DNA of 64,000 nt from the NCBI RefSeq assembly GCF_021869535.1, contig NW_026262668.1, positions 16,244,001 through 16,308,000 of the forward strand, given 5' to 3'. Both the position numbers and the translations under genes were made by a program. The first letter of the stretch is position 1; each line of letters starts with the position of its first letter. This stretch comes from Mytilus californianus. Lineage: Eukaryota. This document shows positions 5,539 through 36,500 of the stretch, in pieces. The notes under the pieces are model-generated. The model worked only from the letters and a program-made list of their open reading frames with translations. It searched no databases and was not told the origin of the DNA.

Positions 5539-8500
5539 GTAATAAAATTTATCAATTTGTCATCATTTTGAAGAATGCAATCATTAGATATTTTCTTACC
5601 AACTCTAAATACCAAACAACAACATACTACATTCATGTTATTTTAATACGAGTTTATTCACTAATTTATTATCAAATATTAGAGTTGCATTGTTTATCTT
5701 GCTTACTTTCCGTAATGACTAGATCAGTTTATATTTATGAGTTGAAATATTACATTCAGTGGTTTTTGTGAATATATATATTTTTATGACAAGGATTCAA
5801 ACAACTATAGATCATCGTACAGCCTTCAACAATGAGCAAACTGCATACCGTGTGGTAAGCTATAAAAGGCCATGGGATAACAGAATGTGAAACAATTCAA
5901 AAGAGGTTCAATTTAAGTTGCTGACATGGAACGGAAAACATTTATTTCAGACAACATCCAATAACAACTACTTCTTGATCAGTATCAAAACCAGCTATGA
6001 AATTGTCTTTTTTTATTTCAAAAGTAGTATGTGAACTTAGTTATACGTATACATGCCTCTTTCAAACATCAATAATATTCTTATTTAGCTGATCTGCCAC
6101 TTGTAGTAGCTGCGTCACAATTGGGAAATGCTTCCATGAAAGGTTATCTGGAAAAGAAGAGACCAAGTACGTAGATTAATTGTTGTATTTGATTGAATAT
6201 TGATATTAACTTTCAACTAGTCACATGAAATAACATTAACGGTACCAATTTTTCTGCACCAAATGCGCATTTCGACAATAAATGTCTCTTCAGTGATGCT
6301 CGAGGATAAAATATTTGGAAATCAAAAGCTTATCAAAAATATACTACTATACATGTATCTTCCACTATTGTACGTGTATCTGCCCACTGTTAACTATTGT
6401 TCCTGTATCTTCCACTGTTAACTATTGTACGTGTATCTGCCCACTGTTAACTATTGTACATGTATCTTCCACTTTTAACTATTGTACATGTATCTTCCAC
6501 TGTTTTACTATTGTACGTGTATCTTCCACTTTTAACTATTGTACATTTATCTTCTACTGTTAACTATTTCTGGTATCTTCCACTGTTAACGATTGTACGT
6601 GTATCCTCCACTGTTAACTATTGTACATATATCTTCCACTTTTTTACTATTGTACGTGTATCTTCCACTTTTAACTATTGTACATTTATCTTCTACTGTT
6701 AACTATTTCTGGTATCTTCCACTGTTAACTATTGTACATATATCTTCCACTTTTTTACTATTGTACGTGTATCTTCCACTTTTAACTATTGTACATGTAT
6801 CTTCCACTGTTAACTATTTCTGGTATCTTCCACTGTTAACGATTGTACGTGTATCTTCCACTGTTAACTATTGCACGTGTATCTTCCAATGTTAACTATT
6901 GTACGTGTATCTTTCAATGTTAACTATTGTACGTGTATCTTCCATTGTTAACTATCATACGTGTATGTTCAACTGTTTACTATTGTACGTGTATCTTTCA
7001 CTATTAAATATTGTACGTGTATCTTCCACTGTTAACTATTGTACGTGTATCTTCCACTATTAACCATTGTACGTGTATCTTCCACTATTAACTATTGTAC
7101 GTGTATCTTCCACTGTTCACAATTCTACGTGTATCTTTCACTGTAACTATTGTACGTGTATCTTCCACTATTAACTATTGTACGTGTATCTTCCACTGTT
7201 CACAATTCTACGTGTATCTTCCACTGTTAGCACTGGTACGAGTATCTTCCACTGTTTTACTATTGTACGTGTTTCTTTCACTGTTTTACTATTGAACGTG
7301 TATCTTCCTCTGTTAACTACTGTACGTGTATCTCCCACTGTTGACTATTGTACGTGTATCTTCCACTGTTAACTTGTGTACTTGTTTTTTCCACTGTTAA
7401 CGATTGTACGTGTATCTTCCACTGCTAATTATTGTACAATTAATGTCTCTTAAGTGATGCTCGAGGCCAAAATATTTGGAAATCAAAAAGCTTATTGAAA
7501 ATATACTACTGTACATGTATCTTCCACTATTGTACGTGTATCTGCCCACTGTTAACTATTGTACCTGTTTCTTCCACCGTTAACTATTGTATGTGTATTT
7601 TCCACTACTAACGATTGTACGTGTATCTTCCACTGTTAACTATTTTACGCGTTTCTTCTACTGTTAACTCTTACACTATTAACTATTGTACGTGTTTCTT
7701 CCGCTGTTTTACTATAGAACATGTATCTACCACTGTTAACTACTGTAAGTATATCGCCCACTGTTAACAACTGTACGTGTATCTGCCGCTGTTGACTGTT
7801 GTACGTGTATCTTCTTCTGTTAACTATTGTTCATTTCTCTTTTTATCAAGTCTCACTGTTACACTAATATATGCATCACGTGCATACCATCAATGTGAGC
7901 TTTTGGACTTTGTCAAACTCGTTAAAGCATCAGTATGGGCTATAAGACTTTGTACAAATAGTTAAAACATCCATATGAGATATTGGATTGTTTCCAAATA
8001 GTCAAAACATCGATATGAGCTATAATTGTACTTTGTACAAATAGTCAAAACATCCATATGAAATATTAGACTTTGTACAAAAAGTCAAAAACTCAGTATC
8101 AGCTATTGTACTTTGTACAAAAAGTCAAAAACTCAGTATCAGCTATTGTACTTTGTACAAATGGTCAAAACATCAGTATCAGCTTTTTTACTTTGTACAA
8201 ATAGTCAAAACATTTAAGTGTATTGTTTTTTGGGGAGTTTGTTGTCTTATTGGAATACATCCTTAGTAATTTTCTTTTTTTTCTCTTCATAATACAGAAA
8301 AAATATTTTTAAAAAAAACGGAGAATACTTTTATGCTTTTTGTACATTTTTTCTTATCATAGGTAAAAAGTTACTGTCTATAATTTTGTATATCTTTTCT
8401 TATCATAGGTAAAAAGTTACTGTCTATAAAATATCAGCGAAGATGGTGTTTGGTTTACGGGAATTTATTTCTGTACTATGATTCTCCTGATGATAAAGCA

Positions 8501-11500
8501 CAGAAAGGTGGATTTTCCTTAGAAAGTAAGTATTCAAAATTTTGTTTTATATCTAACCGTCAAGTTGTTCAATGTTTCGTCTGGTATTGTGTACTTAATG
8601 ATAATGTATTAATATTGTTGTGGCTGCACTCCTCATTCACATCAATGTCGTATTTTATATGAATTTGGGCGTGGCTTACAAACTTTTATCTCACAAAATT
8701 AAAAGTTGTTACTTCGCAAATAAAATAAAAGCAATTATATACAAATTTCCTTTGGAAAATGAATGGCAGCAACAGGAGTTATTTATTTGTTGTTGTAATT
8801 AGACAATACAAAAAGAAAGCAATGACTTTAAATATAGGCAACAGTTATCTAACAGCTGGTGGCTTTTTTGTTTTGTCTCTTTAGCATCTATTTACCATCA
8901 AAGTTTTTTAAACAATGTTTAAAACTTATTTAATTGTGTGCAGTTTAATCATCTTATTATTATTTTTTTCACATTTTATTTAATTTTTGTTTTATTACAG
9001 GTTATAGGTTTTTACATAGTCCAGGGCACAGTCCATTCGGGTTTTCTTTAGTCAGTCAACATAAACGAAAATTCGAGGTATTATTCCTTATATTTGTAAT
9101 TATGATTTACCGTTTATTTTGGAAAGTACTGCGTGTGATGAAAGTTAAGAATATTAATTTTGATAGTTAATTAAATTTACTTGCACATGTACTTAACACA
9201 ATTGTAAATGTCATTGAAATGAAGATGACAATAAGTAATTACAATTGTTCCTATTAAGCATTTGAAAGTACAAGACAGTAAATAGACAAGACAGGACAAG
9301 AACAAAATCAAGATGCAAATTATCTAAGCTGAACAATAAAAAAGAGAGCATCAAGTCAGGTGGGGGCAGCAGCAGCAGAACGCACCAAATTGTAAATATG
9401 TGTTGTAACCATCATTTACAACTATACTTTATAGAAGGAATGTAATTTGGATATGTAGGTTTAAGCCATAGATTGTGATAATGTCAGTTTAAGCCAAGGG
9501 TTTGTGATTATGTGGGTTTAAAACAAGGGTTTGTGATTATGTGTGTTTAAGACAAGGGTTTGTGATTATGTGGATTTAAGCAAAGAGATTGTGATTTTGG
9601 GGGTTTAAACCAAGGGATTGTGATTATGCGGGTTTAAGCCAAGGGATTGTGATTATGTGGGTTTAAGCCAATATATATATATATATATATATATAAACAA
9701 ATCTAAATTGAAAACAACGTTCAAACCTATGATTGCGTTGGATAAAAACCGCAATTTTTATACGTGTGCATGCAAAACAAATTTCTTGGTAGAGGGGTCT
9801 AAATACAGCACAAACAACATTTTCCAAAAGACCAAAAAAGTGAAAAAGTATATTTTAACAAAAGGCATTTGACTAGCAGGTCGAACAACTGATGTTCTTA
9901 AACCCTGCTGACTGCCATTGGCGATTGCCAAATAAACGGATCACCAGATGTAACAAAATGGATCTTATTATTGATTTATTACCAAACAGAAAACAATAAA
10001 TTTGCGGAAAAGATGGTATACCGCAAACACGAGGTGCAAAAATTTGTACACCATATCCGGATTTCGACAATTAATGTCTCTTCAGTGATGTTAGGAATCG
10101 AAACGGTATTTGGAAGGCCATATAATTTACCTCAATTTAGGATAGACTCTTGAATTTTGGAAGAGTCGAAATGGGATGAACGGATCATATAAACCCGAAG
10201 GCAAATATAATACAAGCCCAAACGAAAAAATATAAACAAATCTAAATTGAAAACAACGTTCAAACCTATGATTGCGTTGGATAAAAACCGCAATTTTTAT
10301 ACGTGTGCATGCTAAACAAATTTCTTGGTAGAGGGGTCTAAATACAGCACAAACAACATTTTCCAAAAGACCAAAATATATATATATATATTAAATAATT
10401 TTCGATGTCTAGATTTTACCTTTTCATGTGAAGTGCATTAAAGTTTTATTTGTTTCAACAACAACAGAATGATATACACGTAAAACAAACTATTTTGTTG
10501 TTTATTTTAGTTCATGGCTCCTAGCCAAGATGAATACATAAATTGGGAGAAAGCAATTAAGAAAGGAATTTCACTTACTCGGAGATCAAAAGGTAATTAC
10601 ATTTATGGCACCTACATTTATGTATCAATAAAGCAATACAAAAACTGAAGATTAAAAACAAAAACGATGAACCATTTTTGTCTAAGCTTAACATTCCAAA
10701 TAAATGACCATACCTCGTGTCAAGAAGTGTTCTCAAGGTATAGATTACTTTGGCAAAACCTGTCGGAATTTTGGGTCCTCAATAAACTTCAACTTCATAC
10801 TTTATTTAGCCTTTTTAACTTTTTTGATTCGAGCTTCAACATCACTTTACCATAACCCTAACAACCCCTGCCTCATGGTCTTCATAACTTTATAACCATA
10901 AACATTTACCATAACCCTAACCACCCGTGCATAATGGTCTCCATAACCATAAACATTTACCATAACCCTAGTCGCCCCTGCCTAATGGTCTTCAAAACCA
11001 TAAACATTTACCAAAACCCTAACAGCCTCTGCCTTATGGTCACCATAACCATAAACATTTACCATAACCCTAACCGCCCGCGCCTAATGGTCTCCATAAC
11101 AATAAACATTTACCATAACCCTAACCGCCCCTGCCTAATGGTCTTCATAGCCATAAACATTTTCAATAACCCTAACAGCCCCTGTCTCATGGTCATCATA
11201 ACCATAAACATTTACCATAACCCTAATAGCCCTGCCTCATGGTCTTCATAACCATAAACATTTACCATAACCCTAATTGCTCCTGCCTCATGGTCTTCAT
11301 AACCATAAACATTTACCATAACCCTAACAGCCCCTGCCTCATGGTCACCATAAACATAAACATTTACCATAACCCTAATTGATCCCTGCCTGATGGTCTT
11401 CAGAACCATAAACATTTACCATAACACTAACAACCCCTGCTTCATGGTCTTCATAACCATAAACATTTACCATAACACTAACAGCCCCTGCTTAATGGTC

Positions 11501-13712
11501 TCCATAACTATAAATATTTACAATAACCCTAATCGCCCCCTGTCTAATGGTCTTCATAACCATAAACCTCACCGCCCCTGCATAAGACTATTTACCATAA
11601 TCCTAACCGCCCTTGCCTATTTACCATTACCCCTACCGCCCCTGCCAACGACTATTTAACATAATCCTGACCGCCCCGGTGTAAGACTATATACAATAAC
11701 CCTTACCGCACCTTCCCAAGACTATTTACCATAACCCTACCAGCCCTTTTTAAGACTATTAACCATAACTCTAAACGCCCCTATCTAAGACTATTTACCA
11801 TAACCCTAACCGCCCCTGCCTAAGACTATTTACCATAACCCTAACCGCCCCTGCCTAAGACTATTTATCATTACCCTACCCGCCCTGCTTAAGACAATTA
11901 ACCCTAACCCTAACCGCCCCTGTCTAAGATTATTTACCATGACCTTAACCGCCCCTACCTAAGACTTTTTACCATAACCATTACCGCCCCCGCCTAATGG
12001 TCTTCATATGCTTTATTGTTATCATGAAGAAATCATAACAATTGTTTATTTTGGTGCGTCCTTAATCACTGAAACCATTACTATTTCACATACAAAGTTG
12101 GCATTAACATGTCAATCTTGTGAAGCTTGTTTAGCTGTCGACCCTGTCAACGTTGCCAACATTTCAACCATATCTACACTGTGAACCTGTCGATCCATCA
12201 ATTTAAATACTACACCGTATCAAATCCATATTAAAGATCAAGAACTGTTTACCCCCTATACACTACTTGAACCGATTTCTTTTTTTTTTTTTGCTATTTT
12301 GTGTCGTTTGGTTGCTATTAGGTTGACGTATACATTTCCTTTTATTTGTATCCATTTATATACAATTATTTTGATAACAATACCAACGCAATTTAAAACG
12401 TTGAAAGAGAAATGTTTGCAAGAAATAATTTTCAGTGGTTCTCTTCATTTTTAAATTTCTGCTTGTAGAACCTTTAAAGGTAAAACCACTGCATACAAGC
12501 AAAGATGACCAGGATCTGAATAAAAAACATGCAAATTTAGAAAAGATGTCTACGATGCCAAATATGAAAATTCCTGAGCGGCCGAGAATTCCTCCCAGTA
12601 TATATAGCAGTAGTCCTTACAGCGTTGGGACCAAAACTTTCCCTGAATCAACGAAAACACAGACTAATAATGTTACCTATTCACCTAAAATACAAGAGAG
12701 AAAGGCGATGCAGGAGGCAGTCAAATATGATATATACAATAAGGGAAACAAAACATCAGGTAGTGAAAGTGATTCTGATAGTGATGGAGACGGTTACATA
12801 AAAACTGCAAAATTAAACCTTCCAAAGACTCCAATAAAACGCACAGAAAACACGCCAATAGACGACACAAAAGATTACACACAAGATGACTATATGATAG
12901 TGCTTCCAAACATACCTCCGGATAAAAGTGTTAAAGCGGAGAGTCCTTACGTTGAGTTCAAGTCAGATGAAACTGATAGTAAAATGGATGGAACAATTGA
13001 AAAATTATACTGCAGTGTAAAAAAACCTTCTATTGGAACAATACAGCAGATATCCGAATCGGACTATGCGCTTGTAGATCATTCTCTTCTGAAAGACGAA
13101 GACAATAACGAGGTAACTACAAGAAATCCAGCTATTGGATTCATTCAACAGCGGTCTGAATCAGATTATGCCTCTGTTGATCATTCTGTTTTGAAAAGCA
13201 AAGACGATGTTGTTAAAGGTTCTAGAAACCCTGGCATTGGTGCAATTAAACAAAGGTCGGAGTCTGATTATGCTTCAGTTGATTGTGTAACTGTTCTTCA
13301 TAGACAAACCCCTCCGTCTAGAAAAGCTGAACAAAAATCTAATTCAGGATATGTTACCGTTGATCACTATGGATTGGTCAACAATCAGGAGAATGACGAA
13401 GCAGATTCCGATGATGACTATGTTAACCCACATACTGTTGTTGATTATACTAGCTTGAACAATATGCATTTACCGCAAAAAAAAGTGCAACCCGTGTCAT
13501 CTTCGTCTACAGAATCAGAATCCGATGATTCTGACGATTACATGACGCCGGTATGTCCGCTTAAAACCACGACAAACAACAATAAGCAGGTCGACGAAAT
13601 GAGTTATTTAAGCAGTGAATCCTCAGATACAGATGACCAGCTGTCAGATCAAGCATCAGTACCCATTATTGTTGATAAAGTATACGATCCTATTTATGAA
13701 AATTTTGCGTAG
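5523..13712 (+). CDS. Spliced gene: N-terminal PH domain (SKAP1/SKAP2-like) followed by a long low-complexity tail rich in tyrosine phosphorylation motifs; docking/adaptor protein of about 540 aa
   Basis: Exons 5523-5538, 6089-6166, 8409-8525, 9001-9077, 10511-10592 and 12469-13712 join with GT-AG ends and matching phases (1,1,1,0,1). Product: MSKTGADLPLVVAASQLGNASMKGYLEKKRPSKKLLSIKYQRRWCLVYGNLFLYYDSPDDKAQKGGFSLESYRFLHSPGHSPFGFSLVSQHKRKFEFMAPSQDEYINWEKAIKKG...; the GYLEK..WC....F.YY...D...KG.F...F.A.S..E...W pattern is a PH domain resembling SKAP. The start exon is the least certain part. Confidence 0.85.
6089..6166 (+). CDS. PH adaptor exon (DLPLVVAASQLGNASMKGYLEKKRP)
   Basis: tttag| acceptor and |gtacgt donor; 78 nt; start of the PH domain. 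Confidence 0.85.
6256..6299 (-). ncRNA. Minimal type I hammerhead ribozyme motif (AUU site)
   Basis: Minus strand reads gcatca CUGAAGA gac-auuuauu-guc GAAA u-gcgc-a UU ugguge-type 3' arm (uggugc); helix I gcauca/uggugc, intact core. Confidence 0.8.
6345..7830. repeat. 28-bp minisatellite (tattgtacgtgtatcttccactgttaac) in two blocks
   Basis: Dozens of degenerate units; explains ORFs 6315-7965. Confidence 0.95.
7945..8215. repeat. ~40-bp minisatellite (ctttgtacaaatagtcaaaac...)
   Basis: 40-bp period visible between 8071 and 8111. Confidence 0.85.
8409..8525 (+). CDS. PH adaptor exon (KKLLSIKYQRRWCLVYGNLFLYYDSPDDKAQKGGFSLE)
   Basis: catag| acceptor and |gtaagt donor; 117 nt; PH core. Confidence 0.9.
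9001..9077 (+). CDS. PH adaptor exon (YRFLHSPGHSPFGFSLVSQHKRKFE)
   Basis: ttacag| acceptor and |gtatta donor; phase 1 to 0. Confidence 0.85.
9459..9670. repeat. 29-bp minisatellite (tttaagccaagggattgtgattatgtggg), about 7 units
   Basis: Period 9488, 9517, 9546. Confidence 0.85.
9695..10376 (-). mobile_element. Hammerhead-bearing repeat with 539-nt period (about 1.27 monomers) inserted in (TA)n
   Basis: 9695-9837 repeated directly at 10234-10376; (TA)n on both flanks; hammerhead at 10048-10091; truncated sibling at 35286-35420 also abuts (TA)n. Confidence 0.75.
10048..10091 (-). ncRNA. Minimal type I hammerhead ribozyme motif (AUA site, CCGG loop)
   Basis: Minus strand reads acauca CUGAAGA gac-auuaauu-guc GAAA u-ccgg-a UA uggugu; 6-bp helix I, intact core. 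Confidence 0.85.
10511..10592 (+). CDS. PH adaptor exon (FMAPSQDEYINWEKAIKKGISLTRRSK), C-terminal PH helix
   Basis: ttttag| acceptor and |gtaatt donor; contains the conserved PH tryptophan. Confidence 0.88.
10840..12005. repeat. Compound minisatellite: 51-bp units switching to 35-bp units, sharing the core atttaccataaccctaaccgcccctgcct
   Basis: Direct reading; the 51-bp (17-codon) period explains ORFs 10934-11659. Confidence 0.92.
12469..13712 (+). CDS. PH adaptor terminal exon, tyrosine-motif/acidic tail
   Basis: ttgtag| acceptor at 12467-12468 in phase 1 opens into the 425-aa ORF 12435-13712; stop TAG. Confidence 0.9.
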
Positions 13713-13814
13713 TGAAATAAGATAGTTTTTGAATACGGGCATGACATAATTACAAAACATGTGCATTGGAAAGTTGTACAAACATGTAAACCCTTAATCA
13801 GCTTATGCTTCTCA

Positions 13815-13935
13815 TATATGTACATGTATGAGTTAAATGTGTCATATGTACATGTATGAGTTTAATATGTACATGTACGAGTTAAATGTGTCATATGTAC
13901 ATGTTTGAGTTAAATGTGTCATATGTACATGTACG
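13815..13935. repeat. 28-bp tandem repeat (gagttaaatgtgtcatatgtacatgtat), about 4 units, probably in the 3' UTR
   Basis: Period 13830 to 13858. Confidence 0.75.
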
Positions 13936-14030
13936 TGTTTTATGTACTATATTTATTAAAGTTTAATGTTCATCATTCCAATGCATTTAATATACAAATC
14001 TCATCAAAGATACCAGGCTTTTATCTTGGT

Positions 14031-14074
14031 ACGCCAGACGCGTATTTCGTCTACATAAGACTCATCAGTGGCGC
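14031..14074 (-). ncRNA. Hammerhead motif, intact core, weakened helix III
   Basis: gcgcca CUGAUGA guc-uuaugua-gac GAAA u-acgc-g UC uggcgu. Confidence 0.7.
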
Positions 14075-15100
14075 TCGAATCAAAACAAAGCAAGGCCAAG
14101 TCAAATATTACAAAATTGAAGAGAATTAATAACCGAAAATTTTGAAAAATTGTGCTAAATACGTCTTGGCAATCTATATGTTGAGGTAGAAAATGAGTTT
14201 TGAATATTTTGAAAACAGTAAATTTACAGAAAATGAACAATTCACCCCCCGGTTTGGCAGGGTTCGTGTTGTTCCGTATTTAGTATTCTATATTGTGTTT
14301 TGTATACTTTTTTTTTTTTTTTCTTTTTGGTCGTTTTTCAATTATTTTTTTTGGCCATTTAGGTGTCAGTTTGTCTTCGACTTATGAGTTTGAATATCCC
14401 TTTGGTATCTTCCGCCTCTTCTTTTCCTGTCAGCACAATGGAGTATTGAAAATTAAACAGTCTTAAGCTTCCATTAGTGTCATTTTACACGGGTGACTAA
14501 GTTTTTAAAATATAGGAAGAAGGATGACAGAATGCCAAGGATTCAGTTCAGTGTGTCAAGTGTTACGGTGAGTAATTCCAATAGAGCAACTCTGAACAAT
14601 TATATATAATCAGAGACCTATCTACTGTTTGATTCCTGTATTTTATAGGATTTAAGCCTTTCAGAATTTGACCATAAATTAGCATCACAAATATAGACTG
14701 GCACCTATTCTTTTATCTATTTGACTAGGATGTCCGTATGATGTAAGGGAGAGAACCAACATGACCACAAATCCTGTTTTCAGAAAAAAACATGTTTTTG
14801 TAAAGTGCCAGATGCTGACCACTGTTTCTGTTAAAGTTTGTATTGAATTGAGGATATAGCCAGTTTTATTTTTTATTGTTTCAGTTTTGTTGCAGCGTTC
14901 ATAGTAAATTTTGCTCGATTTTGTCCTGTTCTGCAAAACTTAGGCACCATCTATTTCTAGTATGTTTTTTTGCAAAGGGGGGCTTGTGATTATAATTGAT
15001 AAAAAAAAAATTCTACCCTAATAAAAAGAATATTTTTTCAATAATTTTAAGTCATGTATACACAATAAACTCCTCATAGATACCAGAACTGAAATGTTAT

Positions 15101-15144
15101 ACGCCAGACGCGCGTTTCGTCTACAAAAGACTCACCAGTGACGC
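15101..15144 (-). ncRNA. Hammerhead motif with core mutation (CUGGUGA)
   Basis: Same family as 15461-15504, exactly 360 nt away; A6 to G change in the core. Confidence 0.7.
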
Positions 15145-15460
15145 TAGAATCAAAAACAATTTAAAAGGCCAAAGAAAGTACGAAGTTGAAGAGCATTGAG
15201 GACCCGAAATTCCTAAAAGTTGTGCCAAATACAGCTACGGTAAACTATTCCTGAGGTAGAAAAGCCTTAGTATTTGGAAAATTCTAAGTTTTGTAAAAAG
15301 TTAATTTATAATTATGACCATATCAATGATAATTCATGTTAACACAGAAGTGCTGACTTCTGGGCTGGTGATACCCTCGGGGAGAAAAACTCCGCCAGCA
15401 GTGGCATCGACCCAGTGGTTGTAAATAAACTTATCATAGATACCAGGATTGAAATTTTAT

Positions 15461-15504
15461 ACGCCAGACGCGCGTTTCGTCTAAAAAAGACTCATCAGTG
15501 ACGC
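15461..15504 (-). ncRNA. Minimal type I hammerhead ribozyme, canonical GUC site
   Basis: gcguca CUGAUGA guc-uuuuuua-gac GAAA c-gcgc-g UC uggcgu; predicted cleavage between 15467 and 15466. Confidence 0.88.
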
Positions 15505-16530
15505 TCGAATAAAAAAACGTCAAAAAGGCCAAATAAAGTACGAAATTGAAGAGCATTGAGGACCCAAATTTCCAAAAAGTTTTGCCAATACATTTTTCAT
15601 CGATGTTGTTTTTTTTTTTTTTTTTTCTACTTATTTTCAATGGAAATTTCTGTTTCACTAATTTATTTTAAAGATGAATGGCTGTTGCATTAGCCTTACA
15701 AATTTCGTAATTATGGATTTGTTGTTTTTAATACATTCTACATTTTTCTTATATACTGTTAAATATTAACCAAACCGTACAAGTTAAGTAATATTTCGTA
15801 GAAAACCGTCTCACTACTATACAAGTTGAAATGTTATTTAATCATCCTCTTCCTTGAGACTTTTTTTCGGAAACGTTTTTAATTCAGATTAAGATATTTG
15901 AACGACTATATTATATGCGTATTTCAGACCAGACAAAGTTAAAAGACTCCCTAAAATAAATGACACACAGCATATAAGAATTTTATTACAGTTTTTGAAA
16001 ATCTGTATTAAACGCAAGTGGTTTGAAGGCCTCAGGAAAAAAGACACTATTCAGTATGTGAATACAAAGATATGTCCGACTAATATCTTATTAATATATG
16101 ACAGATTTAAATTGATTTTTGTTTGATTTTTGATTCAAGGGGGCCAAAAAGGGGAAACGACTTTTTTTTACCTTCTTCTTTCTATTGCATTTGAAAATTG
16201 TACGTTTGTATTGATCACTTTTTTATAACATGTTTCTCTTCAGTATCCTTCTATTTTTATTTCAAGTCTTCTGTACCATGCCGTTATGTACTTGTGAAAT
16301 GACACCAGGAAGGTTAGATCTAAAGTGGTTAAAATAACTACCAAACCGGGAATTTGCCTTTTGCGGTTGTCAGTGTCATGTCCAGATGATGATGTTTTCT
16401 TTTTAGTTTATTACTTTTTTTTCGTAAAACGGGGTAACGTTACCATGATTTTTTATTTTCTATTTATTTTTAATACATATTGATAAATCATTGAATACAA
16501 AAAATGAAAACAACAATTTTTAAATTATAT

Positions 16531-16893
16531 GCGTCCGAAGCTCCTTTCTTTTACGTTCATCAGAAGCGCTCAAAGCCAAACATTTAAAAGAAAAAAAAGC
16601 CAAGGACGTATAAGAACAGAAAGCGTTGGAGAGCTATATGACCATAAAAGACTAAAACGAAATAGCCAAATCCATCTAAGGTCAACTTTGCCTAAGGAAT
16701 TGAAACCTTAGTTTCTCAATAATTTATTAATTTATAAACGGACAATTTTAGAAAAGTTTTTATAAATCATGTCAGTACTGACTACTGAGTTGATAGCAGT
16801 GGTATCGACCCAATGCTGTAAAAAATGAAAATAACATTTTATAAATTGCATGCATCCGAATCGCTTTTCTGGATTTACCTCCATCAGGAACGC
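16531..16893 (-). ncRNA. Two degenerate hammerhead motifs of a second family (16531-16569 and 16852-16893), 321 nt apart
   Basis: CUGAUGA...GAAA g-gagc-u UC ggacgc and CUGAUGG...GAAA a-gcga-u UC ggaugc within a decayed tandem dimer. Confidence 0.55.
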
Positions 16894-19273
16894 CCAAAGT
16901 TTTCTATTTGAAAGGCAAGGATTATAAGAATCGAGACAGTACTAAACTTGTAAATAAATAGAGACAGAAACCCATTCAGGTTTGCATTTTTGACAATTAA
17001 AAATTACCAGACAAAAAATATATGAAGTGGATGTATACAAGCGACATTAATCAAATGAAAAACTAGAAAATATCCATACTTCAAAAGGAAAAAAAACAAC
17101 AAGTGTAAATTGTGTTCTCTTTATCTTGGTAATTACAAACGTGTCTTTAAATGAGAGTGAATGAGCATAGTGGGTGATACATACATAGCAGGAGATCCTG
17201 ACTCTGTCGACGCATCTGCCTGGACTCGCTCCATTGAATGTGATTCCATCGGGTTTTGTTTTTTTTTATCTTGATTTGTTTATTCTATGAGATTATTATA
17301 TTGAAATTATAAAGAAACTTAGGTTTCAACTTCCTCAGGCAAAGTTGACCTTAGATTGATTTTGTTATTTTTTTCGGTTCTCTTTGGTCATATAGTTCTT
17401 CAACTGTTCCGGTTTTTATAAATCCTGGCTTTCAAATATTCGGCAATTTATAAAGAGTTGTTTTCATTTTTTTTTAACATAGGTAAACCTCTGTTACCTC
17501 TGATAATATCAATAAGTCAAAATTCTACAGGAAAATCAAATCCGGTTCAAACTCATATGTGGTATCGTAGTAATCAATCAATAAAATAAACATTTTATAA
17601 ACATAGATAAGAAATAATACAATCCTTTCAAATAAATTTAACCACAATAACTTTCACATCAGAATCAATATGAAAGTTGGTCATTCAGTAAAATTACAGG
17701 TGCAGCACTCGGGAAACTTTCTAGACACCCAAATTAATTGATATAATGCTGGAGTATTATTTTTTTTCCAATCCTCAACAATAATTGTGTGTGATCATTA
17801 ACATGAATGTCCCAGGTTCGATAGCATTAACTCGCCATCATATTTGCGAGAAACCCTAATGGGATTCAAGCAAAAAAAGAAATGAACACAGGAAATTATA
17901 ATTCAGAATGATTCGGGTCCATCTGAATTATATTTCAAACTCTAACACTGATCAGTATTTTGTCTGAGTCAAATATATCATTTTTTTAAATATGTCATTA
18001 AAATAATGACGACAAATGAAACCATTTGCAGATCTCGATTTGCTTCTTCTATGTAAAGTATGTAAAATATTCTATGGGCAATAACACCAAAAGAAATTGT
18101 ATAAACAACTATCACAACAGATATTTACTTTCCAAGCTTTTTTGCACGTATGTGCCAAATCAGGATCATTCATCTCAATAATCGTTTTGAAGTGTATTCA
18201 GAAGTGAAGATCAATTCTAAAACAAAAATGCAAAAATGGATTAAAAATCTTCAGCAATTTTGCCCGTCATATTTCCCAATATTATTTCACTTTTTCAAGG
18301 TATTTGACAATACCTTTAACACTAACTACTAGTAATAGTTATGATTGCAATGTTGATTATTAAATGGTGATATAACTCACTAACCACTGTTAACCTACAG
18401 TAAAGATCAGTCATGTCAGTGTTGTCGATTTAGGTCAATAACTTTTACAAGGCGTCAACTGAATGCTTCAATAATTTCATTATGTTTTTAAAATCTGGTA
18501 TTGCTGATCATTTTTGCAGTTACTAGTAATTGTTTCTGTCTATCAATTATTGGTTGCATGTGAACTGACAAAAAAACCATCAAATTGGTATGGAAATATC
18601 ATTTACGAACAATAAAGAGTCGTCTGATATTTTTTGTTGAAGTAAAATATAAGTAAATCTTGACATTCTTAATATTTTCAAACTTGCAAGATTTTCTGTA
18701 TCTTTTGGCGTGATTAGACACACATTTTACCCGTATGGTCTATTTTGGCTTGATGACCATATTGCTCAATGAACAGACAAATGATTAGAAATCTGTCATT
18801 GAAACAACCTATAGATAAATAATTTCATATGTGTTTGAAATGGTTCACTAAGTTAGGTGAAAAATCATTGAGGAAGTTTTAGGACGTAACGGAGGTTAAA
18901 TGATGCCAATAGCTTATACTCCATTTTGTGTCAGATGAGCTAAATCATCGAGAATTAAGAACTGTTACGGACTTGCTGCACGTGTAAGTGATGAACGATA
19001 CCAAATTAGTTCAAATAGTTATAAAAATGCCAGCTAACTTTCAATATTCTTTTGACAACAATTTTAAAATGAATGGCCTGAATGTCCACAAATATAAATC
19101 CATAGAAATATGTTAGTCGAAATATAACATATGTCATTTTAATGTTTCCAACGTTGTAGTTCAAACAAAAATTCTAGCTTTCACTATGGATGATATTCCA
19201 AGTTTATAAAGGTTCACAAGTTAATAAATCCAATATTGAAAAAAATTGAAAACAACACGTTTAATAATTTCAT

Positions 19274-19315
19274 GCGTCCGAAGCGCTTTTCTGGATTTAC
19301 CTTCATCAGGAACGC
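19274..19315 (-). ncRNA. Hammerhead-like motif (UUC site) with atypical helix II
   Basis: gcguuc CUGAUGA agguaaaucca GAAA a-gcgc-u UC ggacgc; helix I 6 bp; helix II only 2 bp and flanked by A/A. Confidence 0.65.
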
Positions 19316-19464
19316 TCAATGCCAAACATTTAAAATCCGAGGGATGTATAAGTGCCGAAACAGTTGAAGAGCTATATGACAAAAATACCTAAAACAAATA
19401 GCCAAATTCATCTAAGTTCAACTTTGCCTGAGGGAGTTGAAACCTTAGTTTGAAGTTATACAAA

Positions 19465-19720
19465 AATCATCAAAGATACCAGGCTTATAACTGGGTACGC
19501 CAAATACGCGTTTCGTCTACAAAGACTCACAAGTGGCGCACGAATCAAACAGTTGGAAGGCCAAATCAAATTCGAAGTTTAAGAGCATTAAAACCGAAAA
19601 TTTAGAAAAGTATCAATTCTAGCCATTCAATCATCTGGGTGTTGAAACACCTTAGTGTTTCGAAAATTTCAACACTTTATAACCAATGAATTTACAGAAC
19701 ATATATAAATTTCCACAATT
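19465..19720 (-). mobile_element. Decayed retrozyme-like repeat with dead hammerhead (19497-19540), fused to the family-2 copy at 19250-19450
   Basis: Homologous to 15060-15590; core reads CUUGUGA and the cleavage triplet is altered. Confidence 0.6.
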
Positions 19721-22700
19721 GCTTTAAATCTAAATTCTGAATAATAAATATCCTTTGATCAACTTTATCAACCTTTTAAGATGAAATTTACTAAATCGTT
19801 TTGGCCTCCTTGTAAAACATATTTTATCAAGAATGTTGTGGGTTTTTTTTTATTACCTTATTCACAATAATATATTTTTCTACAGGATATTCTCATTTGT
19901 CAACTTCACTATGGTTGATACAGCTAGATGAACAGTTCCAGATATTCAAACCTTAGGTACAATTACGTCACTGTGTACATGACTTTTGTAACGTAACACA
20001 GAGGTATCCTACCGTTAACCCCCGAGGGTATCACCAACCCAGTAGCCAGTACTACGGTACTGGCATCAAAATAGGGATATTGTGCTGTTACAAACATTTT
20101 TGAAATAGTTTTAAATCAAGGAATATATCTCCCTTATGCAAAGTTCTGATTCCTTGCACGGCTTTTGGCTGTACTTTTTGTTATTTTCTTGTTTTATAAG
20201 CTCTTCATTTTTTAAATATGATTTAGATTTTCAAATATGATAAAGTTGAGGATTAGATACACTTTGTGACTAAATATGCTCACTATATGTTGATAACAGA
20301 ACTGATTGTTATAAAATATTCTTATTCTATTCTTATTCTGTTGGTGTCGAGGATTTATTGTCAAACTGCACATCTGGTGCAGAAAAATTAGTACCGTTGA
20401 TGTTGTTACTACTACCACAACACAACTATGTCCAAGATCTAGGACAACTAACAAAACACATTATTATTCATTTCTAAAAAAACATATTAAACTATTATTA
20501 TATACAAACGATTTCTCATAACAGAACTAACTTCAAGACAGTTGTTTTCCATTCGTTTGATGTGTTTGAGTTTTTGATTTTGCCAATTGATCAGGGTTTT
20601 CCGTTTTGAATTTTTGTCGGTGTTTTTGTTATTTTATTTTTTCCTACAAGATTTCTCCGAAACTCTTTGGATCCATATCAGAAATTTCATAATTTCAAGA
20701 TTATTTTATGTTGGATGGTACCAAAACCTGACATTCTACTTCAATGAAAATCCACGAAATATATGGCACTGGACGTTTATGGAAAAAAATCTATATTCTA
20801 AATTACCCAGAAATGTTCTTTCTAAGCTTTGCAGCTGAGAAACTTTTGATTTTGAATCTGCATTTAATCACTGTTTGGTAAAGATTAAAAATACATGGTT
20901 ATTAATTCTTCCACATGATAAAGGGCATGTCCCAAATCATGTTGTCATGCAACAAACGACCACTGAATTACAGGCTCCTGACTTGTTTGGATGCTATATC
21001 ATAGCCATTTTAAGAAACAATGAGCAAATACTACATTGGACTAAATATGCCTACTTGTCATTTACAGGTTAACACTCAGGTTTTTGACATGATGCACCTA
21101 TGCCCCAACCATTAAAAGCCTATGTTGAAAATTTAAAATCATATCTTCGACACGAAAATCTCGTTAAATACAATTGAGATGATAGTCAAGTTCATTATCA
21201 TCAAGGTTATTGATGTGTTGTGGTGAGATCATGCACCACATGTCAAATATCAGAAGCAAATGTCAAAGGAAAACAAAAGTTATGGCTGTAACGATAAATG
21301 TACCAAACCAATTATTCCACCTTGAAGTCAAAGATTAAATTCAATGGTCATTTTCAATGGGTCGAAACACATCGTTTCAAGATGAAGCATCCGCATGCCA
21401 AATATCAATATCATATCAGTCTCCTCAGAAGGGTAAACACAAAGAATTATTTTTGATGACAAATACACATGTCGTTTCTTCAATTCTATTAATACCCTGT
21501 GTTAATCAATTAATATCGGACTTCAATTGTATATCATATGATATCATGTGATTGATATCAAGTTAACCTTTACGACATCCTTTGATGCCCAATGAAATGC
21601 GACATATTGTCTTGATGTGATCCAACCGTAACAGTAATCTCAGATAATATGTAATTAGAACATCTAATATTAAAACTTACAATGTTGAAATAGACAGAAA
21701 ATGTTAATTTACTAAATACATAAAAACACAAATATAATCATGAACTTTATAATCCGGCGTCCACAGCTCTATGGACGCCAGATTATATTATTTATATCAC
21801 TGATGTCAGATTATATTTGTTTTTAAATTAAGTAGAACCTACTTGCAGCATCTAAAAATCTGGAGTGCTCACACAGACCCAGCATGACTGGATCAAAAAC
21901 AGAGTATTTTACAGTAAAAGACCTTAAACCAAAACTTCAACCCGATACGGGATGTATGAACCATTGGATGAACATAAGAACAACCGAATGCACAGACCGG
22001 AAAACAGAACTACAGAAGATGGAGCATAACATCCAGTGAAAAAACCTATAGTTTGTATGCAGTAATTAACCATTACAATGAGGTCAAGGACAACAGACAT
22101 ATGCTAGACTTATGACCATGAGACATTTGCACACAAGATAAATATTATTTCTGTAAGTATCTAACATGATTAACATTTCTGCATTCTGACCTAAGAAGTT
22201 TTATACATGAAGCTATTGCCAATGCTGCCAGAGGACAGACAATAAACCTAGCTATAAGTCTTTTGGCTTAATGTGAAAAGAAATACAATATAATACAGAG
22301 AACATTTATATGATAATATTTTGATTTTAACAAATGTATATTAAATCTCTGTACAACAAAAAAAGGTATTGAGGCCATTCATTTTTATTATTTTGATTTT
22401 AACAGATATAGATCAAATCTCCATACAACAATATCAAGACTGGTCAAACAAATTCTAACTGAATATAAAACATGGAACATAAATTTACTTTTACATTGAT
22501 ACAAGAAATATTTACAATTGCAGGATATAATTTACTATAGATATTGAAATCTGAAATCAAACAAACACACTAAATATTGTTTATATTAAGTTCATAACAA
22601 ACCAGTATTTTTATTTTTAAAAGAATGGAAGTTATTCATAAAGTAGTAGTACATTATAATAATAATTTTAAGGTTTTATACAGTTCATTTTTGTATTCTT

Positions 22701-33500: not shown

Positions 33501-36500
33501 GATCATAAAATATAAAATATACACCAAATATAGTTGAACTATTGCATATAGTATTAGAAAAAAAGACCAAAACTCAAAAACTTAACTTTGACCACTGAAC
33601 CATGAAAATGAGGTCAAGGTAAGATGACACCTGCCAGCTAGACATGTACACCTTACAATCATTCCATACACCAAATATAGCTGACCTATTGCATGCAGTA
33701 TTAGAAAGAAAGACCAAAACTCAAAAACTTAACTTTGACCACTGAACCATGAAAATGAGGTCAAGGTCAGATGACACCTGCCAGCTAGACATGTACACCT
33801 TACAATCATTCCATACACCAAATATAGTAGACCTATTGCATACAGTATAAGAAAAACAGACCAAAACACAAAAACTTAACTATAACCACTGAACCATGGA
33901 AATGAGGTCAAGGTCAGATGGCACCTGCCAGTTGGACATGTACACCTTACAGTCCTTCCATACACCGAATATACTAGACCTATTGCTTAGAGTATCTGAG
34001 ATATGGACTTGACCACGAAAACTTAACCTTGTTCACTGATCCATGAAATGAGGTCGAGGTCAAGTGAAAACTGTCTGACGGGCATGAGGACCTTGCAAGG
34101 TACGCACATACCAAATATAGTTATCCTATTACTTATAATAAGAGAGAATTTAACATTACAAAAAATCTTAACTTTTTTTTCAAGTAGTCACTGAACCATG
34201 AAAATGAGGTCAAGGACATTGGACATGTGACTGACGGAAACTTCGTAACATGAGGCATCCATATACAAAGTATGAAGCATCCAGGTCTTCCACCTTCTAA
34301 AATATAAAGCTTTTAAGAAGTTAGCTAACGCCGCCGCCGCCGCCGGATCACTATCCCTATGTCGAGCTTTCTGCGACAAAAGTCGCAGGCTCGACAATAT
34401 CAAAACTATGTTCTAATTTCACTTTTCATTGTTCTATTTTTATAACACTAACCATGCTAACTAATTCCACTTTTATTATTTTATCTATCTTTCTAAGGTT
34501 TATATGCATGTTCTATGAGATATCATTTTTAAACCACTAAATTTATACTTTATCATATCTATTCATACAATTTCTGGATACAGACACATATCTAAGAGGC
34601 AAACCATGAAGACCCAGTCTGACCCTGTAATTCAGTGGTTGTAGTTTGTTGCTGTATATTATATTTGTTTTCCATTAATTGTTTTGAACATAAATCAAGC
34701 CATTAGTTTTCCTCCTTTGAACTGTTTCACATTTGTCATTTCAGGGCCATTAATAGCTTAGTATGTGGTATGGGTTTTTCTCATTGTTGAAGGCTGTATG
34801 GTGATCTTAAGTTGCCAACCTTCTACGTTATTTGGTGTCTGATTGAGAGTTGTCTCATAGGCGATCATGTCAAATCCTTTTATTCTTATATTTCAACTTG
34901 GGTTGCTGTCTTTACCTTTCTAATTATTTTCAGTTGAATAAAAATTCATGAAAACACTTCAATATATGCAAAACACTGAAAGCACAATAACTTTCCATAT
35001 ATATATATATATATATTTATATATATTGTATCAGATATCCTTGTTTAATTCCTACGAGAAGGTAACACCTCCCGAAACGAAAGCTGATTTTTATCAGCTA
35101 TAGTTAGAGGAGGGGATAAGGTGTCTGCGCATTGCTAGGTGGTGTTGTCGTAGAAGTTAGAAATAAAAAGTACAGGTTCCAGCCCCGCTCGCGGAAGAAG
35201 TAAAGAAACAGATCTACTCTAACATCATTACGTTGATTTTCTAGGCACTTTATGTATATATATATATATATAATATATATATATATACAAGTCTAAATTG
35301 AAAACAACGTTCAAACCTATGATTGCGTTGGATAAAAACCACAATTTTTATATGTGTGCATGCAAAACAAATTTCTCGGTGGAGGGGTCTTAATACAGCA
35401 CAAACAAGTATATTTTAACAAATATGTATATGTGACTCAGTGTATTGTATTCTTTAACTTGTATTTGCATCAGTGCATTCATTTTCTTGCAATTTTCTTT
35501 GTTTTATTTGTACAGAAAATTAAGGGCATTTGTTGCAATATCTTTTAACATTAAAATACACTTTCTATAATGAAGTTTTTGGTAGGTAAATTTTTTCAGG
35601 CTTGTAGGTTGTTCATTGAGAAAACAGATACTTTATTTTAACTTTCCCAAATTTTTAAATTTTTCACCTATTTTTTTTAATTAATATACAAATGTAAATT
35701 CTAATTTTCCTTATAAACATGTATCATAAATGTCTACATTTGAGAAATAGATAATTTCTTACTTAGTAGTAAATACAAGCAAGTTTCATGTGTCATAAAT
35801 TCAATGGCAATCGTTCTGTATCAGGGATCCATAAGGATATTGATATCAGGTCACAATGTACAGGCTATATCAAACCTCAAAATCTGTCAAAACATCTGTT
35901 TGAAGTACATAATAATGTTTAAATGATAGGGCTTGCTCAATATCGCACAAGGCATCACCCCTCAACCTTTATAATATCTCCAACAGAGCTCGAGGGGACT
36001 ATATTGATGTCTAGGGTTGATACGGTTATGATATTGAAAAAGCCATACGGTATTCTCCAGGAAGTAAGGAAGCAAGTAAATTTTATCTAAAGTAAACAAT
36101 AACAATGAAACATGAGCTCTGATGAGCTCTTCAACTGACTAACTAATGGACGCCAACTATAATCCTCTGATTAATGATGTTGGAGTCACAGGTTGATACA
36201 GGTGTGATATTGAGAGAGCCCTATACTATTATCTATATATACAGGTGTGATATTGAGAGAGCCCTATTCTATTATCTATATATACAGGTGTGATATTGAG
36301 AAAGCCCTATACTATTATCTATATATACAGGTGTGATATTGAGAGAGCCCTATAATCTTATTTATCCCCGGCTCAGTATATTTCTCCGATTTTGATTGGC
36401 TAACATACCTACGGTAGTTAAAAAACCCATAGCCCCGGGTGTTGCTAACCCATATACCCAGACATTGCTATCCATTACCACGGGGAACTGCACACGCCTT

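What the first reader, a model, noticed from the sequence alone, without database searches (positions are those of the whole stretch)
6256..19540. Cluster of nine minimal type I hammerhead motifs whose helix III is always an 8-nt palindrome
Seen: hammerhead cores (CUGANGA..GAAA..UH with 5-6 bp helix I) at 6256, 10048, 14031, 15101, 15461, 16531, 16852, 19274 and 19497, in at least three repeat families. Helix III is only 2 bp plus a tetraloop. In the best copies it reads ACGCGCGU, AUGCGCAU, AAGCGCUU and AUCCGGAU: four different sequences, each a perfect palindrome. Helix I and II also show compensatory changes (guc/gac versus gac/guc). Established: minimal type I hammerheads with palindromic helix III occur in Penelope-like elements and non-LTR retrozymes, work as dimers, and mussel retrozymes yield circular RNAs. 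Inference: several dimer-dependent self-cleaving retroelement families coexist here, and different palindromes could keep families from cross-dimerising.
Basis: partly seen in the sequence, partly recalled or inferred. Interest (0 to 1): 0.8.

Follow-up and report, generated by a model that had tools for sequence, protein, structure and literature searches.

The report
Decayed mussel hammerhead retrozyme copies
This stretch of a Mytilus-type mussel genome holds about eight mostly decayed insertions of small non-coding jumping elements (retrozymes) that carry hammerhead self-cutting RNA motifs; one family is already published and the palindromic stem is a known hallmark, so it is a tidy but ordinary example.

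Summary
All nine motifs exist at the stated positions, all on the minus strand. Five have an intact hammerhead core, and five have a palindromic helix III. Only four have both: 6256, 10048, 15461 and 19274. "Always a palindrome" is therefore overstated.

They belong to tandem-repeat retrozyme families, not to autonomous Penelope-like elements.
- Family B (355-nt unit, ACGCGCGU) is the published Mytilus galloprovincialis retrozyme Mg353, which forms circular RNAs.
- Family C (353 nt, AAGCGCUU) and A1 (about 350 nt, AUGCGCAU) share B's body.
- Family A2 (540 nt, AUCCGGAU) has a different body.

Exact-core copies in the genome number 16,236 for A, 7,636 for B and 4,569 for C. Each family's majority helix III is a palindrome, and compensatory changes support all three helices.

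Copies have fixed 3' ends, variable 5' ends and often more than one unit. This fits Penelope-type reverse transcription from an internal start site.

No locus in the window keeps two intact ribozymes, so none can release a unit by itself.

The dimerisation-code idea is untested. Only A2's CCGG centre is orthogonal, because B, A1 and C all share GCGC. A published single-ribozyme Mg353 transcript self-cleaves.

This scan had already flagged the 540-nt family several times elsewhere in this genome.

The parts
6229..6342 (-). Fragment of family A1 (about 114 nt, roughly 86% identical to other copies). It carries an intact hammerhead at 6256-6299: core CUGAAGA, helix II GAC/GUC, helix III AUGCGCAU, cleavage after U.
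7436..7504 (-). Partial duplicate of the A1 fragment inside the 28-nt minisatellite, 1,161 nt from the first copy. The core is mutated to CUUAAGA and the motif is cut off within helix II.
   Evidence: (repeat families D13, D5)
9691..10375 (-). Family A2 copy of 1.27 units of the 540-nt repeat, 94-96% identical to the reference unit. It has one intact hammerhead at 10048-10091 (helix III AUCCGGAU). Its 3' end is at unit position 364 and abuts (TA)n; its 5' end is also in (TA)n.
   Evidence: (D11)
14005..14177 (-). Old family B fragment (0.49 unit, 73% identical). The hammerhead at 14031-14074 has an intact core but a broken helix III palindrome (AUACGCGU).
15075..15588 (-). Family B copy of 1.45 units (about 80% identical) with two hammerheads 360 nt apart. 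The one at 15461-15504 is intact (Rfam 32.5 bits). The one at 15101-15144 has core CUGGUGA, a change at position 6 of the conserved core.
   Evidence: (D8)
16499..16940 (-). Old family C copy of 1.26 units (75% identical) with two decayed hammerheads. 16531-16569 has lost helix II and its helix III is not palindromic. 16852-16893 has core CUGAUGG and helix III AAGCGAUU.
17298..17445 (+). Family C fragment without a ribozyme, in the opposite orientation to the other copies.
19237..19451 (-). Young family C copy (0.61 unit, 97.7% identical to the reference unit and 96-99% to other genomic copies). The hammerhead at 19274-19315 has an intact core, helix III AAGCGCUU, and a helix II of only two G-C pairs flanked by an A/A mismatch.
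19454..19703 (-). Old family B fragment lying directly 5' of the young C copy. Its hammerhead at 19497-19539 is decayed: core CUUGUGA, helix III ACGCGUAU.
35281..35407 (-). Family A2 3'-terminal fragment (unit positions 238-364) ending in (TA)n.

Best explanation
The nine motifs are the ribozyme modules of about eight separate insertions of non-autonomous, non-coding retroelements of the animal non-LTR retrozyme class. They fall into four lineages:
- B: 355-nt unit.
- C: 353-nt unit.
- A1: about 350-nt unit.
- A2: 540-nt unit.

B is the mussel retrozyme already published from Mytilus galloprovincialis.

Inferred life cycle, taken from the published class:
1. Tandem copies are transcribed.
2. 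The type I hammerheads cut out unit-length RNA.
3. A host tRNA ligase circularises it.
4. A Penelope-like reverse transcriptase copies the circular or multimeric RNA from a fixed internal start site. This gives insertions with a constant 3' end, a variable 5' end and often more than one unit.

The short palindromic helix III is the known metazoan type I architecture. As a hairpin it is unstable. Two ribozymes can share it as an 8-bp helix, the double hammerhead, which would favour cutting in multimers over cutting in finished circles.

Each lineage carries the palindrome of its master copy, kept by compensatory change.

In this window the copies are mostly relics. Only four ribozymes look intact, and no locus has two intact ones, so none can release a unit by itself.
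For: Shown here:
- The motifs are far beyond chance: 5 strict hits against 0.01 in shuffles.
- Covariation supports all helices. 91.7% of cells are paired, against 18-44% when partners are slid. Five pairs change on both sides, including pair 32-35, which cannot form in a hairpin.
- Family B matches the published Mg353 retrozyme sequence.
- Tandem periods are 355, 353 and 540 nt.
- Whole-genome exact-core counts are 16,236, 7,636 and 4,569, with zero matches for the reversed control patterns.
- The majority helix III is a palindrome in every family: about 75, 58 and 66 of the first 100 listed copies, hand-counted, plus 971 exact A1 copies.
- There are no RT or endonuclease ORFs in the region or in 90 related loci.
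- 3' ends are fixed: A2 at unit position 364 in 12 of 24 copies; C at 39-46 in 27 of 41; B at 30-48. 5' ends are scattered, and copies span 0.3-7 units.
- The predicted lowest-energy homodimer is the double hammerhead for A2 and B. The monomer helix III hairpin costs +2.4 to +4.8 kcal/mol.

From papers:
- Mussel retrozyme circular RNAs and in vitro cleavage (PMC7229834).
- Palindromic helix III and dimer model (PMC4209133).
- Internal start of reverse transcription in Penelope-like elements (PMC11167929).
Against: - No RNA data were available, so transcription, cleavage and circles are not shown for this species or for families A1, A2 and C.
- None of the window's motifs reaches the Rfam gathering score.
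- Family C's helix II is far from canonical, so its ribozyme may be weak or inactive.
- The link to a Penelope-like enzyme rests only on insertion anatomy. Many GIY-YIG reading frames exist in the genome, but their DNA could not be fetched, so no autonomous partner with a matching end was identified.
- The folded units are not clearly more structured than shuffled sequence (z = -0.8 to -1.4).
Confidence: 0.85

Rival explanations
1. The different helix III palindromes are selected 'dimerisation codes' that keep coexisting families from forming mixed double hammerheads. Each family would then process only its own transcripts.
For: - Four different palindromes occur in four lineages.
- Modelled homodimers gain -7.7 to -14.7 kcal/mol and form the double hammerhead. 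Mixed pairs gain less (-1.7 to -6.9) and do not form it.
- A2's CCGG centre is orthogonal to the others, at about -1 kcal/mol.
- No paper in the searched library discusses heterodimers of retrozyme hammerheads.
Against: - B, A1 and C share the GCGC centre, and their heteroduplexes keep about 75% of the homoduplex energy. Discrimination is therefore weak for three of the four.
- Adjacent ribozymes in one tandem transcript pair in cis, so interference in trans should be minor.
- A mixed dimer would still cut, so the cost is unclear.
- Any drift under a self-pairing constraint yields different palindromes in different lineages without selection for avoidance.
- Only one change (A1 to A2) is specific to the dimer-only positions.
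Confidence: 0.12
2. The ribozymes act as monomers. The palindrome is then not needed for catalysis as a dimer. It might be a relic, a hairpin preference, or serve another step such as ligation or recognition by the reverse transcriptase.
For: - The published Mg353 construct has one ribozyme with the same helix III. It cleaves co-transcriptionally at about 0.1 per minute.
- Invertebrate retrozyme hammerheads are described as efficient without dimers (PMC7229834).
- For a lizard Penelope-like element, ribozyme mutants insert normally in vitro (PMC11167929).
Against: - The two-pair hairpin is predicted to be unstable, at +2.4 to +4.8 kcal/mol.
- The compensated G-C to C-G change between A1 and A2 affects a pair that cannot form in a hairpin with a 2-nt loop.
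- Single-ribozyme transcripts can still dimerise in trans in a test tube, so the published assay does not exclude dimers.
Confidence: 0.2
3. The motifs are the pseudo-LTR ribozymes of autonomous Penelope-like elements inserted here.
For: - Minimal type I hammerheads occur in the flanking repeats of Penelope-like elements (PMC4209133).
- The spacing between 6256 and 10048 (3.8 kb) is close to the size of such an element.
- The genome holds many GIY-YIG reading frames, some in 3,927-nt tandems.
Against: - There is no RT or GIY-YIG reading frame between or beside the motifs. Only five ORFs of at least 90 aa lie in 4-22 kb, and none has an RT or endonuclease hit.
- The interval 6.3-10 kb is filled with minisatellites.
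- 6256 and 10048 belong to different subfamilies.
- All families are short non-coding tandem units.
Confidence: 0.03

Closest known systems
Mytilus galloprovincialis non-LTR retrozyme Mg353 (Cervera and de la Pena 2020, PMC7229834)
   Same: - Family B has the same ribozyme and the same flanks as in the paper's supplement.
- The tandem unit is 355 nt, against 350-390 nt in the paper.
- It has the same two loop-2 variants, UUUUGUA and UUAUGUA.
- GC content is low, at 40%.
- Families C and A1 share its body: a 91-nt block at 85% identity, and unit positions 36-274.
   Different: - The paper reports about 5,000 copies in two near-identical ribozyme families.
- This genome adds three further ribozyme variants, A1, A2 and C. 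Their core strings are absent from that paper's supplement.
- A2's 540-nt unit lies above the reported range of 170-400 nt.
- Expression and circles are shown only for the published family, in another species.
Minimal and canonical type I hammerheads of Penelope-like elements and metazoan repeats (Cervera and de la Pena 2014, PMC4209133; Rfam RF00163)
   Same: - Helix I is open, with 6 bp.
- The core is CUGANGA...GAAA...UH.
- Helix III has 1-2 pairs capped by a small palindromic loop.
- The double-hammerhead (dimer) model applies.
- Families within one genome are full of compensatory changes.
- The Rfam consensus itself reads ACGcgCGU in helix III.
   Different: - The elements here are not autonomous.
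- Helix II is 3 bp in A and B, or two G-C pairs with an A/A mismatch in C, rather than the long helix II of the minimal Penelope-type motifs.
- The window copies fall just below the Rfam cut-off.
Penelope-like element insertion mechanism: internal start of reverse transcription, 'tail', (TA)n targets (Frangieh et al. 2024, PMC11167929; Craig et al. 2021, PMC8557442)
   Same: - 3' ends are fixed and lie downstream of the ribozyme cut site rather than at it.
- Copies are partial tandems longer than one unit.
- A2 is inserted into (TA)n on both sides.
   Different: - No enzyme was linked to these families here.
- The Naiad elements that prefer (TA)n are reported to lack hammerheads.

Membership tests
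Hammerhead ribozyme type I (Rfam RF00163) | Conserved core CUGANGA ... GAAA ... UH | tested here: met
   Intact in 5 of 9 motifs (6256, 10048, 14031, 15461, 19274). Mutated in 15101, 16852 and 19497. In 16531 the core letters remain but helix II is gone.
Hammerhead ribozyme type I (Rfam RF00163) | Three helices around the core, with helix I open, supported by covariation | tested here: met
   91.7% of cells are paired, against 18-44% in slid controls. Five pairs change on both sides across helices I, II and III.
Hammerhead ribozyme type I (Rfam RF00163) | Score at or above the curated gathering threshold (34 bits) | tested here: not met
   Window copies score 32.5, 27.4 and 25.2 bits. Fourteen family B copies elsewhere in the genome do pass, at up to 44.8 bits. 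Families A and C are not detected by the model at E up to 10.
Hammerhead ribozyme type I (Rfam RF00163) | Self-cleavage | not testable with these tools
   Published only for the M. galloprovincialis homologue of family B (PMC7229834).
Animal non-LTR retrozymes | Type I hammerhead inside short tandem repeats (about 150-450 bp) of low GC content | tested here: met
   B 355 nt, C 353 nt and A1 about 350 nt are within range. A2 at 540 nt is above it. GC is 34-40%.
Animal non-LTR retrozymes | Non-coding and non-autonomous | tested here: met
   No RT or endonuclease reading frame occurs in the region or in 90 related 3-kb loci. LTR, primer-binding-site and polypurine-tract motifs were not searched for separately.
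Animal non-LTR retrozymes | Expressed as unit-length linear and circular RNA | not testable with these tools
   No transcript data were on hand. Shown in the literature for the B-type element in another Mytilus species.
Autonomous Penelope-like elements | RT plus GIY-YIG reading frame between pseudo-LTRs that carry the ribozyme | tested here: not met
   no such frame was found, and the 6.3-10 kb interval is minisatellite DNA.

The most novel reading that the evidence does not exclude
Helix III palindromes work as lineage-specific pairing codes. The change from a GCGC to a CCGG centre made the 540-nt family A2 orthogonal to the older 350-nt families. Its transcripts could then be processed independently, which helped it become the most abundant hammerhead family in this genome.
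Probability: 0.1. Interest if true: 0.55.

Novelty: new member of a known kind. Interest (0 to 1): 0.3.

Why it matters
The window shows four related retrozyme lineages side by side. Their ribozymes diverged by compensated changes in all three helices, which is clean comparative support for the hammerhead fold. One change also supports pairing of two ribozymes through helix III.

The insertion anatomy shows that the copied RNA was not the cut linear monomer: 3' ends are fixed away from the cut site, and copies are longer than one unit. This fits a circular or multimeric template and a Penelope-type enzyme.

None of this changes the current picture. It extends the mussel retrozyme catalogue from one ribozyme type to four and gives concrete constructs for testing dimer dependence.

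Tried and rejected
- Rfam at gathering score gave nothing in the window. Only the permissive scan found three family B copies.
- The Rfam model run on the whole genome scored only 74 of about 217,000 rough candidates. It returned only the ACGCGCGU type, so it could not be used for an unbiased palindrome table.
- Exact pattern counts were used instead. They list only the first 100 places, so the within-family percentages are hand counts on those lists.
- A search for the autonomous partner found many GIY-YIG reading frames. I did not try another tool for it.
- Long open frames in the 90 fetched loci gave no RT.
- Folding whole units gave no clear excess of structure (z = -0.8 to -1.4). 'Highly self-paired' could therefore not be confirmed from thermodynamics alone.
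- Chance as an explanation for the motifs is rejected.
- As for the cluster itself, five exact-core motifs in one 64-kb window would be expected in roughly 140 windows of this genome if copies fell at random. The cluster is a mild local enrichment, not a special structure.
- A test for compensated double mutants within family B was uninformative: one AUGCGCAU copy among 100.
Full report
**Observation**

The nine motifs are real and all lie on the minus strand. A strict hammerhead descriptor was run over the whole 64-kb window. It required 6-nt helix I strands with at least 5 pairs, CUGANGA, a helix II, GAAA, six bases, U and H. It finds five motifs: 6256-6299, 10048-10091, 14031-14074, 15461-15504 and 19274-19315. 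Two hundred dinucleotide-preserving shuffles gave a mean of 0.01.

The other four are decayed homologues:
- 15101 has core CUGGUGA.
- 16852 has core CUGAUGG.
- 19497 has core CUUGUGA.
- 16531 has lost helix II.

The helix III octamer is a perfect palindrome in five of nine (6256, 10048, 15101, 15461, 19274). It is broken in 14031, 16531, 16852 and 19497. Only four motifs combine an intact core with a palindrome, so the title's "always" is overstated.

Rfam's type I model gives nothing at its gathering score. It gives 32.5, 27.4 and 25.2 bits for 15461, 14031 and 15101 in a permissive scan. Families A and C are not seen by that model at all.

**What the elements are**

The window is part of a 1.65-Gb assembly. 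Earlier notes of this scan call it the California mussel; I did not verify the species. The sequence match below does place it in or near Mytilus.

*Family B* (14031, 15101, 15461, 19497)
- It has the same ribozyme and flanks as the cloned M. galloprovincialis retrozyme Mg353, and as the circular-RNA consensus in the supplement of PMC7229834.
- Elsewhere in the genome it forms tandem arrays with a 355-nt period.
- Its core-plus-helix II pattern occurs 7,636 times, with zero matches for the reversed control.

*Family C* (16531, 16852, 19274)
- It has a 353-nt period and 4,569 pattern matches.
- The copy at 19237-19451 is 96-99% identical to other copies, so the family is young.
- Its ribozyme is very uniform. 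Helix II is unusual: two G-C pairs flanked by an A/A mismatch.

*Family A* (6256, 10048)
- It has 16,236 pattern matches.
- Subfamily A2 (AUCCGGAU) has a 540-nt unit, with arrays of at least 24 units.
- Subfamily A1 (AUGCGCAU) has 971 exact matches, spaced about 350 nt apart.

*Relationships*
- B and C share a 91-nt block at 85% identity.
- A1 copies have a body homologous to unit positions 36-274 of B and C, joined to the A-type ribozyme.
- So A1, B and C are one superfamily of about 350-nt elements with three diverged ribozymes.
- A2 combines the A-type ribozyme with a different body.

No RT or endonuclease reading frame lies in the region or in the 90 related loci. The interval between 6256 and 10048 is minisatellite DNA. 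These are therefore non-autonomous retrozyme-type repeats, not pseudo-LTRs of autonomous Penelope-like elements.

**Local anatomy**

| Coordinates | Strand | Family | Size | Identity to reference unit |
|---|---|---|---|---|
| 6229-6342 | - | A1 | fragment | about 86% (to other A1 copies) |
| 7436-7504 | - | A1 | truncated duplicate inside the minisatellite | not computed |
| 9691-10375 | - | A2 | 1.27 units | 94-96% |
| 14005-14177 | - | B | 0.49 unit | 73% |
| 15075-15588 | - | B | 1.45 units, two ribozymes 360 nt apart, one dead | about 80% |
| 16499-16940 | - | C | 1.26 units, both ribozymes dead | 75% |
| 17298-17445 | + | C | fragment, no ribozyme | 83% |
| 19237-19451 | - | C | 0.61 unit | 97.7% |
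| 19454-19703 | - | B | fragment | 76% |
| 35281-35407 | - | A2 | 3'-terminal fragment, no ribozyme | 94% |

No locus keeps two intact ribozymes, so none can release a unit-length RNA by itself.

**Support for the fold and the palindrome**

I aligned 24 ribozymes from the window and the genome. For the hammerhead pairing scheme, 91.7% of cells are paired, against 18-44% when partners are slid. Five pairs change on both sides:
- two pairs in helix I;
- the middle pair of helix II (A-U to U-A);
- pair 15.2-16.2 of helix III (C-G, U-A, A-U);
- the next pair inward (G-C in A1, B and C; C-G in A2).

That last pair cannot form in a hairpin, because it would leave a 2-nt loop. It is the one piece of comparative evidence here that is specific to two ribozymes pairing.

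Genome-wide, the majority octamer of each family is a palindrome. My hand counts on the first 100 listed copies give about 75 for A2, 58 for B and 66 for C.

Most variants in B are CpG-to-TpG or CpA changes. This is what decaying relics look like, so the palindrome is inherited from master copies rather than maintained in every genomic copy.

Thermodynamic modelling gives:
- the two-pair hairpin costs +2.4 to +4.8 kcal/mol;
- the 8-bp homoduplex gains -10 to -13 kcal/mol;
- the predicted lowest-energy homodimer of the A2 and B ribozymes is exactly the double hammerhead.

**Mechanism**

The class is known. Metazoan type I hammerheads with a short helix III capped by a palindromic loop, and the dimer model, are described in PMC4209133. 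Mussel retrozymes producing abundant circular RNAs, probably ligated by a tRNA ligase, are described in PMC7229834.

New here is the end anatomy across 110 arrays or single copies.
- 3' ends are fixed: A2 at unit position 364, abutting (TA)n, in 12 of 24; C at 39-46 nt past the cut site in 27 of 41; B at 30-48 nt.
- 5' ends are scattered.
- Copy lengths range from 0.3 to 7 units.
- Ends almost never coincide with the ribozyme cut site.

So the template was not the cut linear monomer. It was a circle or an uncut multimer, copied from a fixed internal start. That is the behaviour reported for a Penelope-like enzyme (PMC11167929). (TA)n targeting is known for Naiad and Neptune elements (PMC8557442).

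A2 and C share the 14-nt string GTTGTTTTCAATTT just before their 3' ends. This may be a common recognition site; that is inference. The genome has many GIY-YIG reading frames of 755-911 aa, some in 3,927-nt tandems.

Coexistence of several families is supported.

Dimer dependence is not established. The published Mg353 construct carries one ribozyme and cleaves at about 0.1 per minute. The authors contrast efficient invertebrate ribozymes with dimer-dependent amphibian ones. Trans dimers in the tube are not excluded.

The cross-dimerisation idea is weak, for four reasons:
- B, A1 and C share the GCGC centre and keep -7.8 to -8.9 kcal/mol as heteroduplexes. Only A2 is orthogonal.
- Neighbours in a tandem transcript pair in cis.
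- A mixed dimer would still cut.
- Lineage-specific palindromes follow from drift under a self-pairing constraint.

I give the idea about 10%. No paper in the searched library discusses it.

**The cluster**

Exact-core motifs occur about once per 58 kb. Five in one 64-kb window has a Poisson probability of 0.005, which means about 140 such windows genome-wide by chance.

Counting independent insertions makes the 13-kb cluster more unusual. All seven ribozyme-bearing insertions also point the same way (two-sided p about 0.016, my arithmetic). The young C copy starts about 15 nt past the 3' end of an old B copy. This is compatible with insertion near earlier copies or into repeat-rich DNA, but I did not test it.

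**Verdict**

This is a genuine, mostly decayed set of retrozyme copies. One family is already published. The 540-nt family has been flagged several times elsewhere in this genome by this scan. C and A1 are further members of the same known class.

Noticed in passing
window 6364-7830: A 28-nt minisatellite of about 46 copies, with higher-order periods of 56 and 139 nt. It sits directly 5' (on the minus strand) of the A1 fragment. It contains a second, truncated copy of that fragment 1,161 nt away (6275-6441 resembles 7436-7603 at about 92%).
   Followed up: partly
window 10888-11997: Two adjoining minisatellites with periods of 51 and 35 nt. Their units contain AACCCTAACC, which resembles the complement of a TTAGGG-type telomeric repeat.
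   Followed up: no
window 9452-9695: A 29-nt minisatellite (7.6 copies) followed by (AT)12. The A2 element is inserted in that (AT)n, with (TA)n on both sides.
   Followed up: partly
unit positions 24-37 of family C and 337-350 of family A2 (e.g. L063:991-1004, L040:1869-1882; window about 9705-9720 and 19243-19256): Families C and A2 are otherwise unrelated, but both carry the 14-nt string GTTGTTTTCAATTT just before their fixed 3' insertion ends. It may be a shared start or recognition site for the same reverse transcriptase.
   Followed up: partly
L002:1507-1861 (unit positions 40-130) and L063:968-1319 (38-128); window 15184-15428: A 91-nt block is conserved at 85% between families B and C and is also present in A1. 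It folds into the only stem-loops that recur in both predicted structures.
   Followed up: partly
window 6256-19540: All seven independent ribozyme-bearing insertions are on the minus strand. The only plus-strand retrozyme pieces (17298-17445, 20020-20072) lack the ribozyme. This could reflect insertion next to earlier copies, or selection against sense ribozymes in a plus-strand transcript.
   Followed up: no
G000:C110:55838761-55854720 and other places listed: GIY-YIG matches lie inside open frames of 755-911 aa. Some are in head-to-tail arrays spaced 3,927 nt apart and some are inverted pairs, as expected for Penelope-like elements. The DNA could not be fetched.
   Followed up: no
window 12435-13712 (+): A 425-aa open reading frame lies between the A2 and B insertions. 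It has no Pfam match at E up to 0.01.
   Followed up: partly
L086:1301-1912: A family C copy and a family B copy meet tail to tail, 3' end against 3' end. Other 3-kb loci also hold two different retrozyme families (L043, L050, L060, L079, L083, L001).
   Followed up: no
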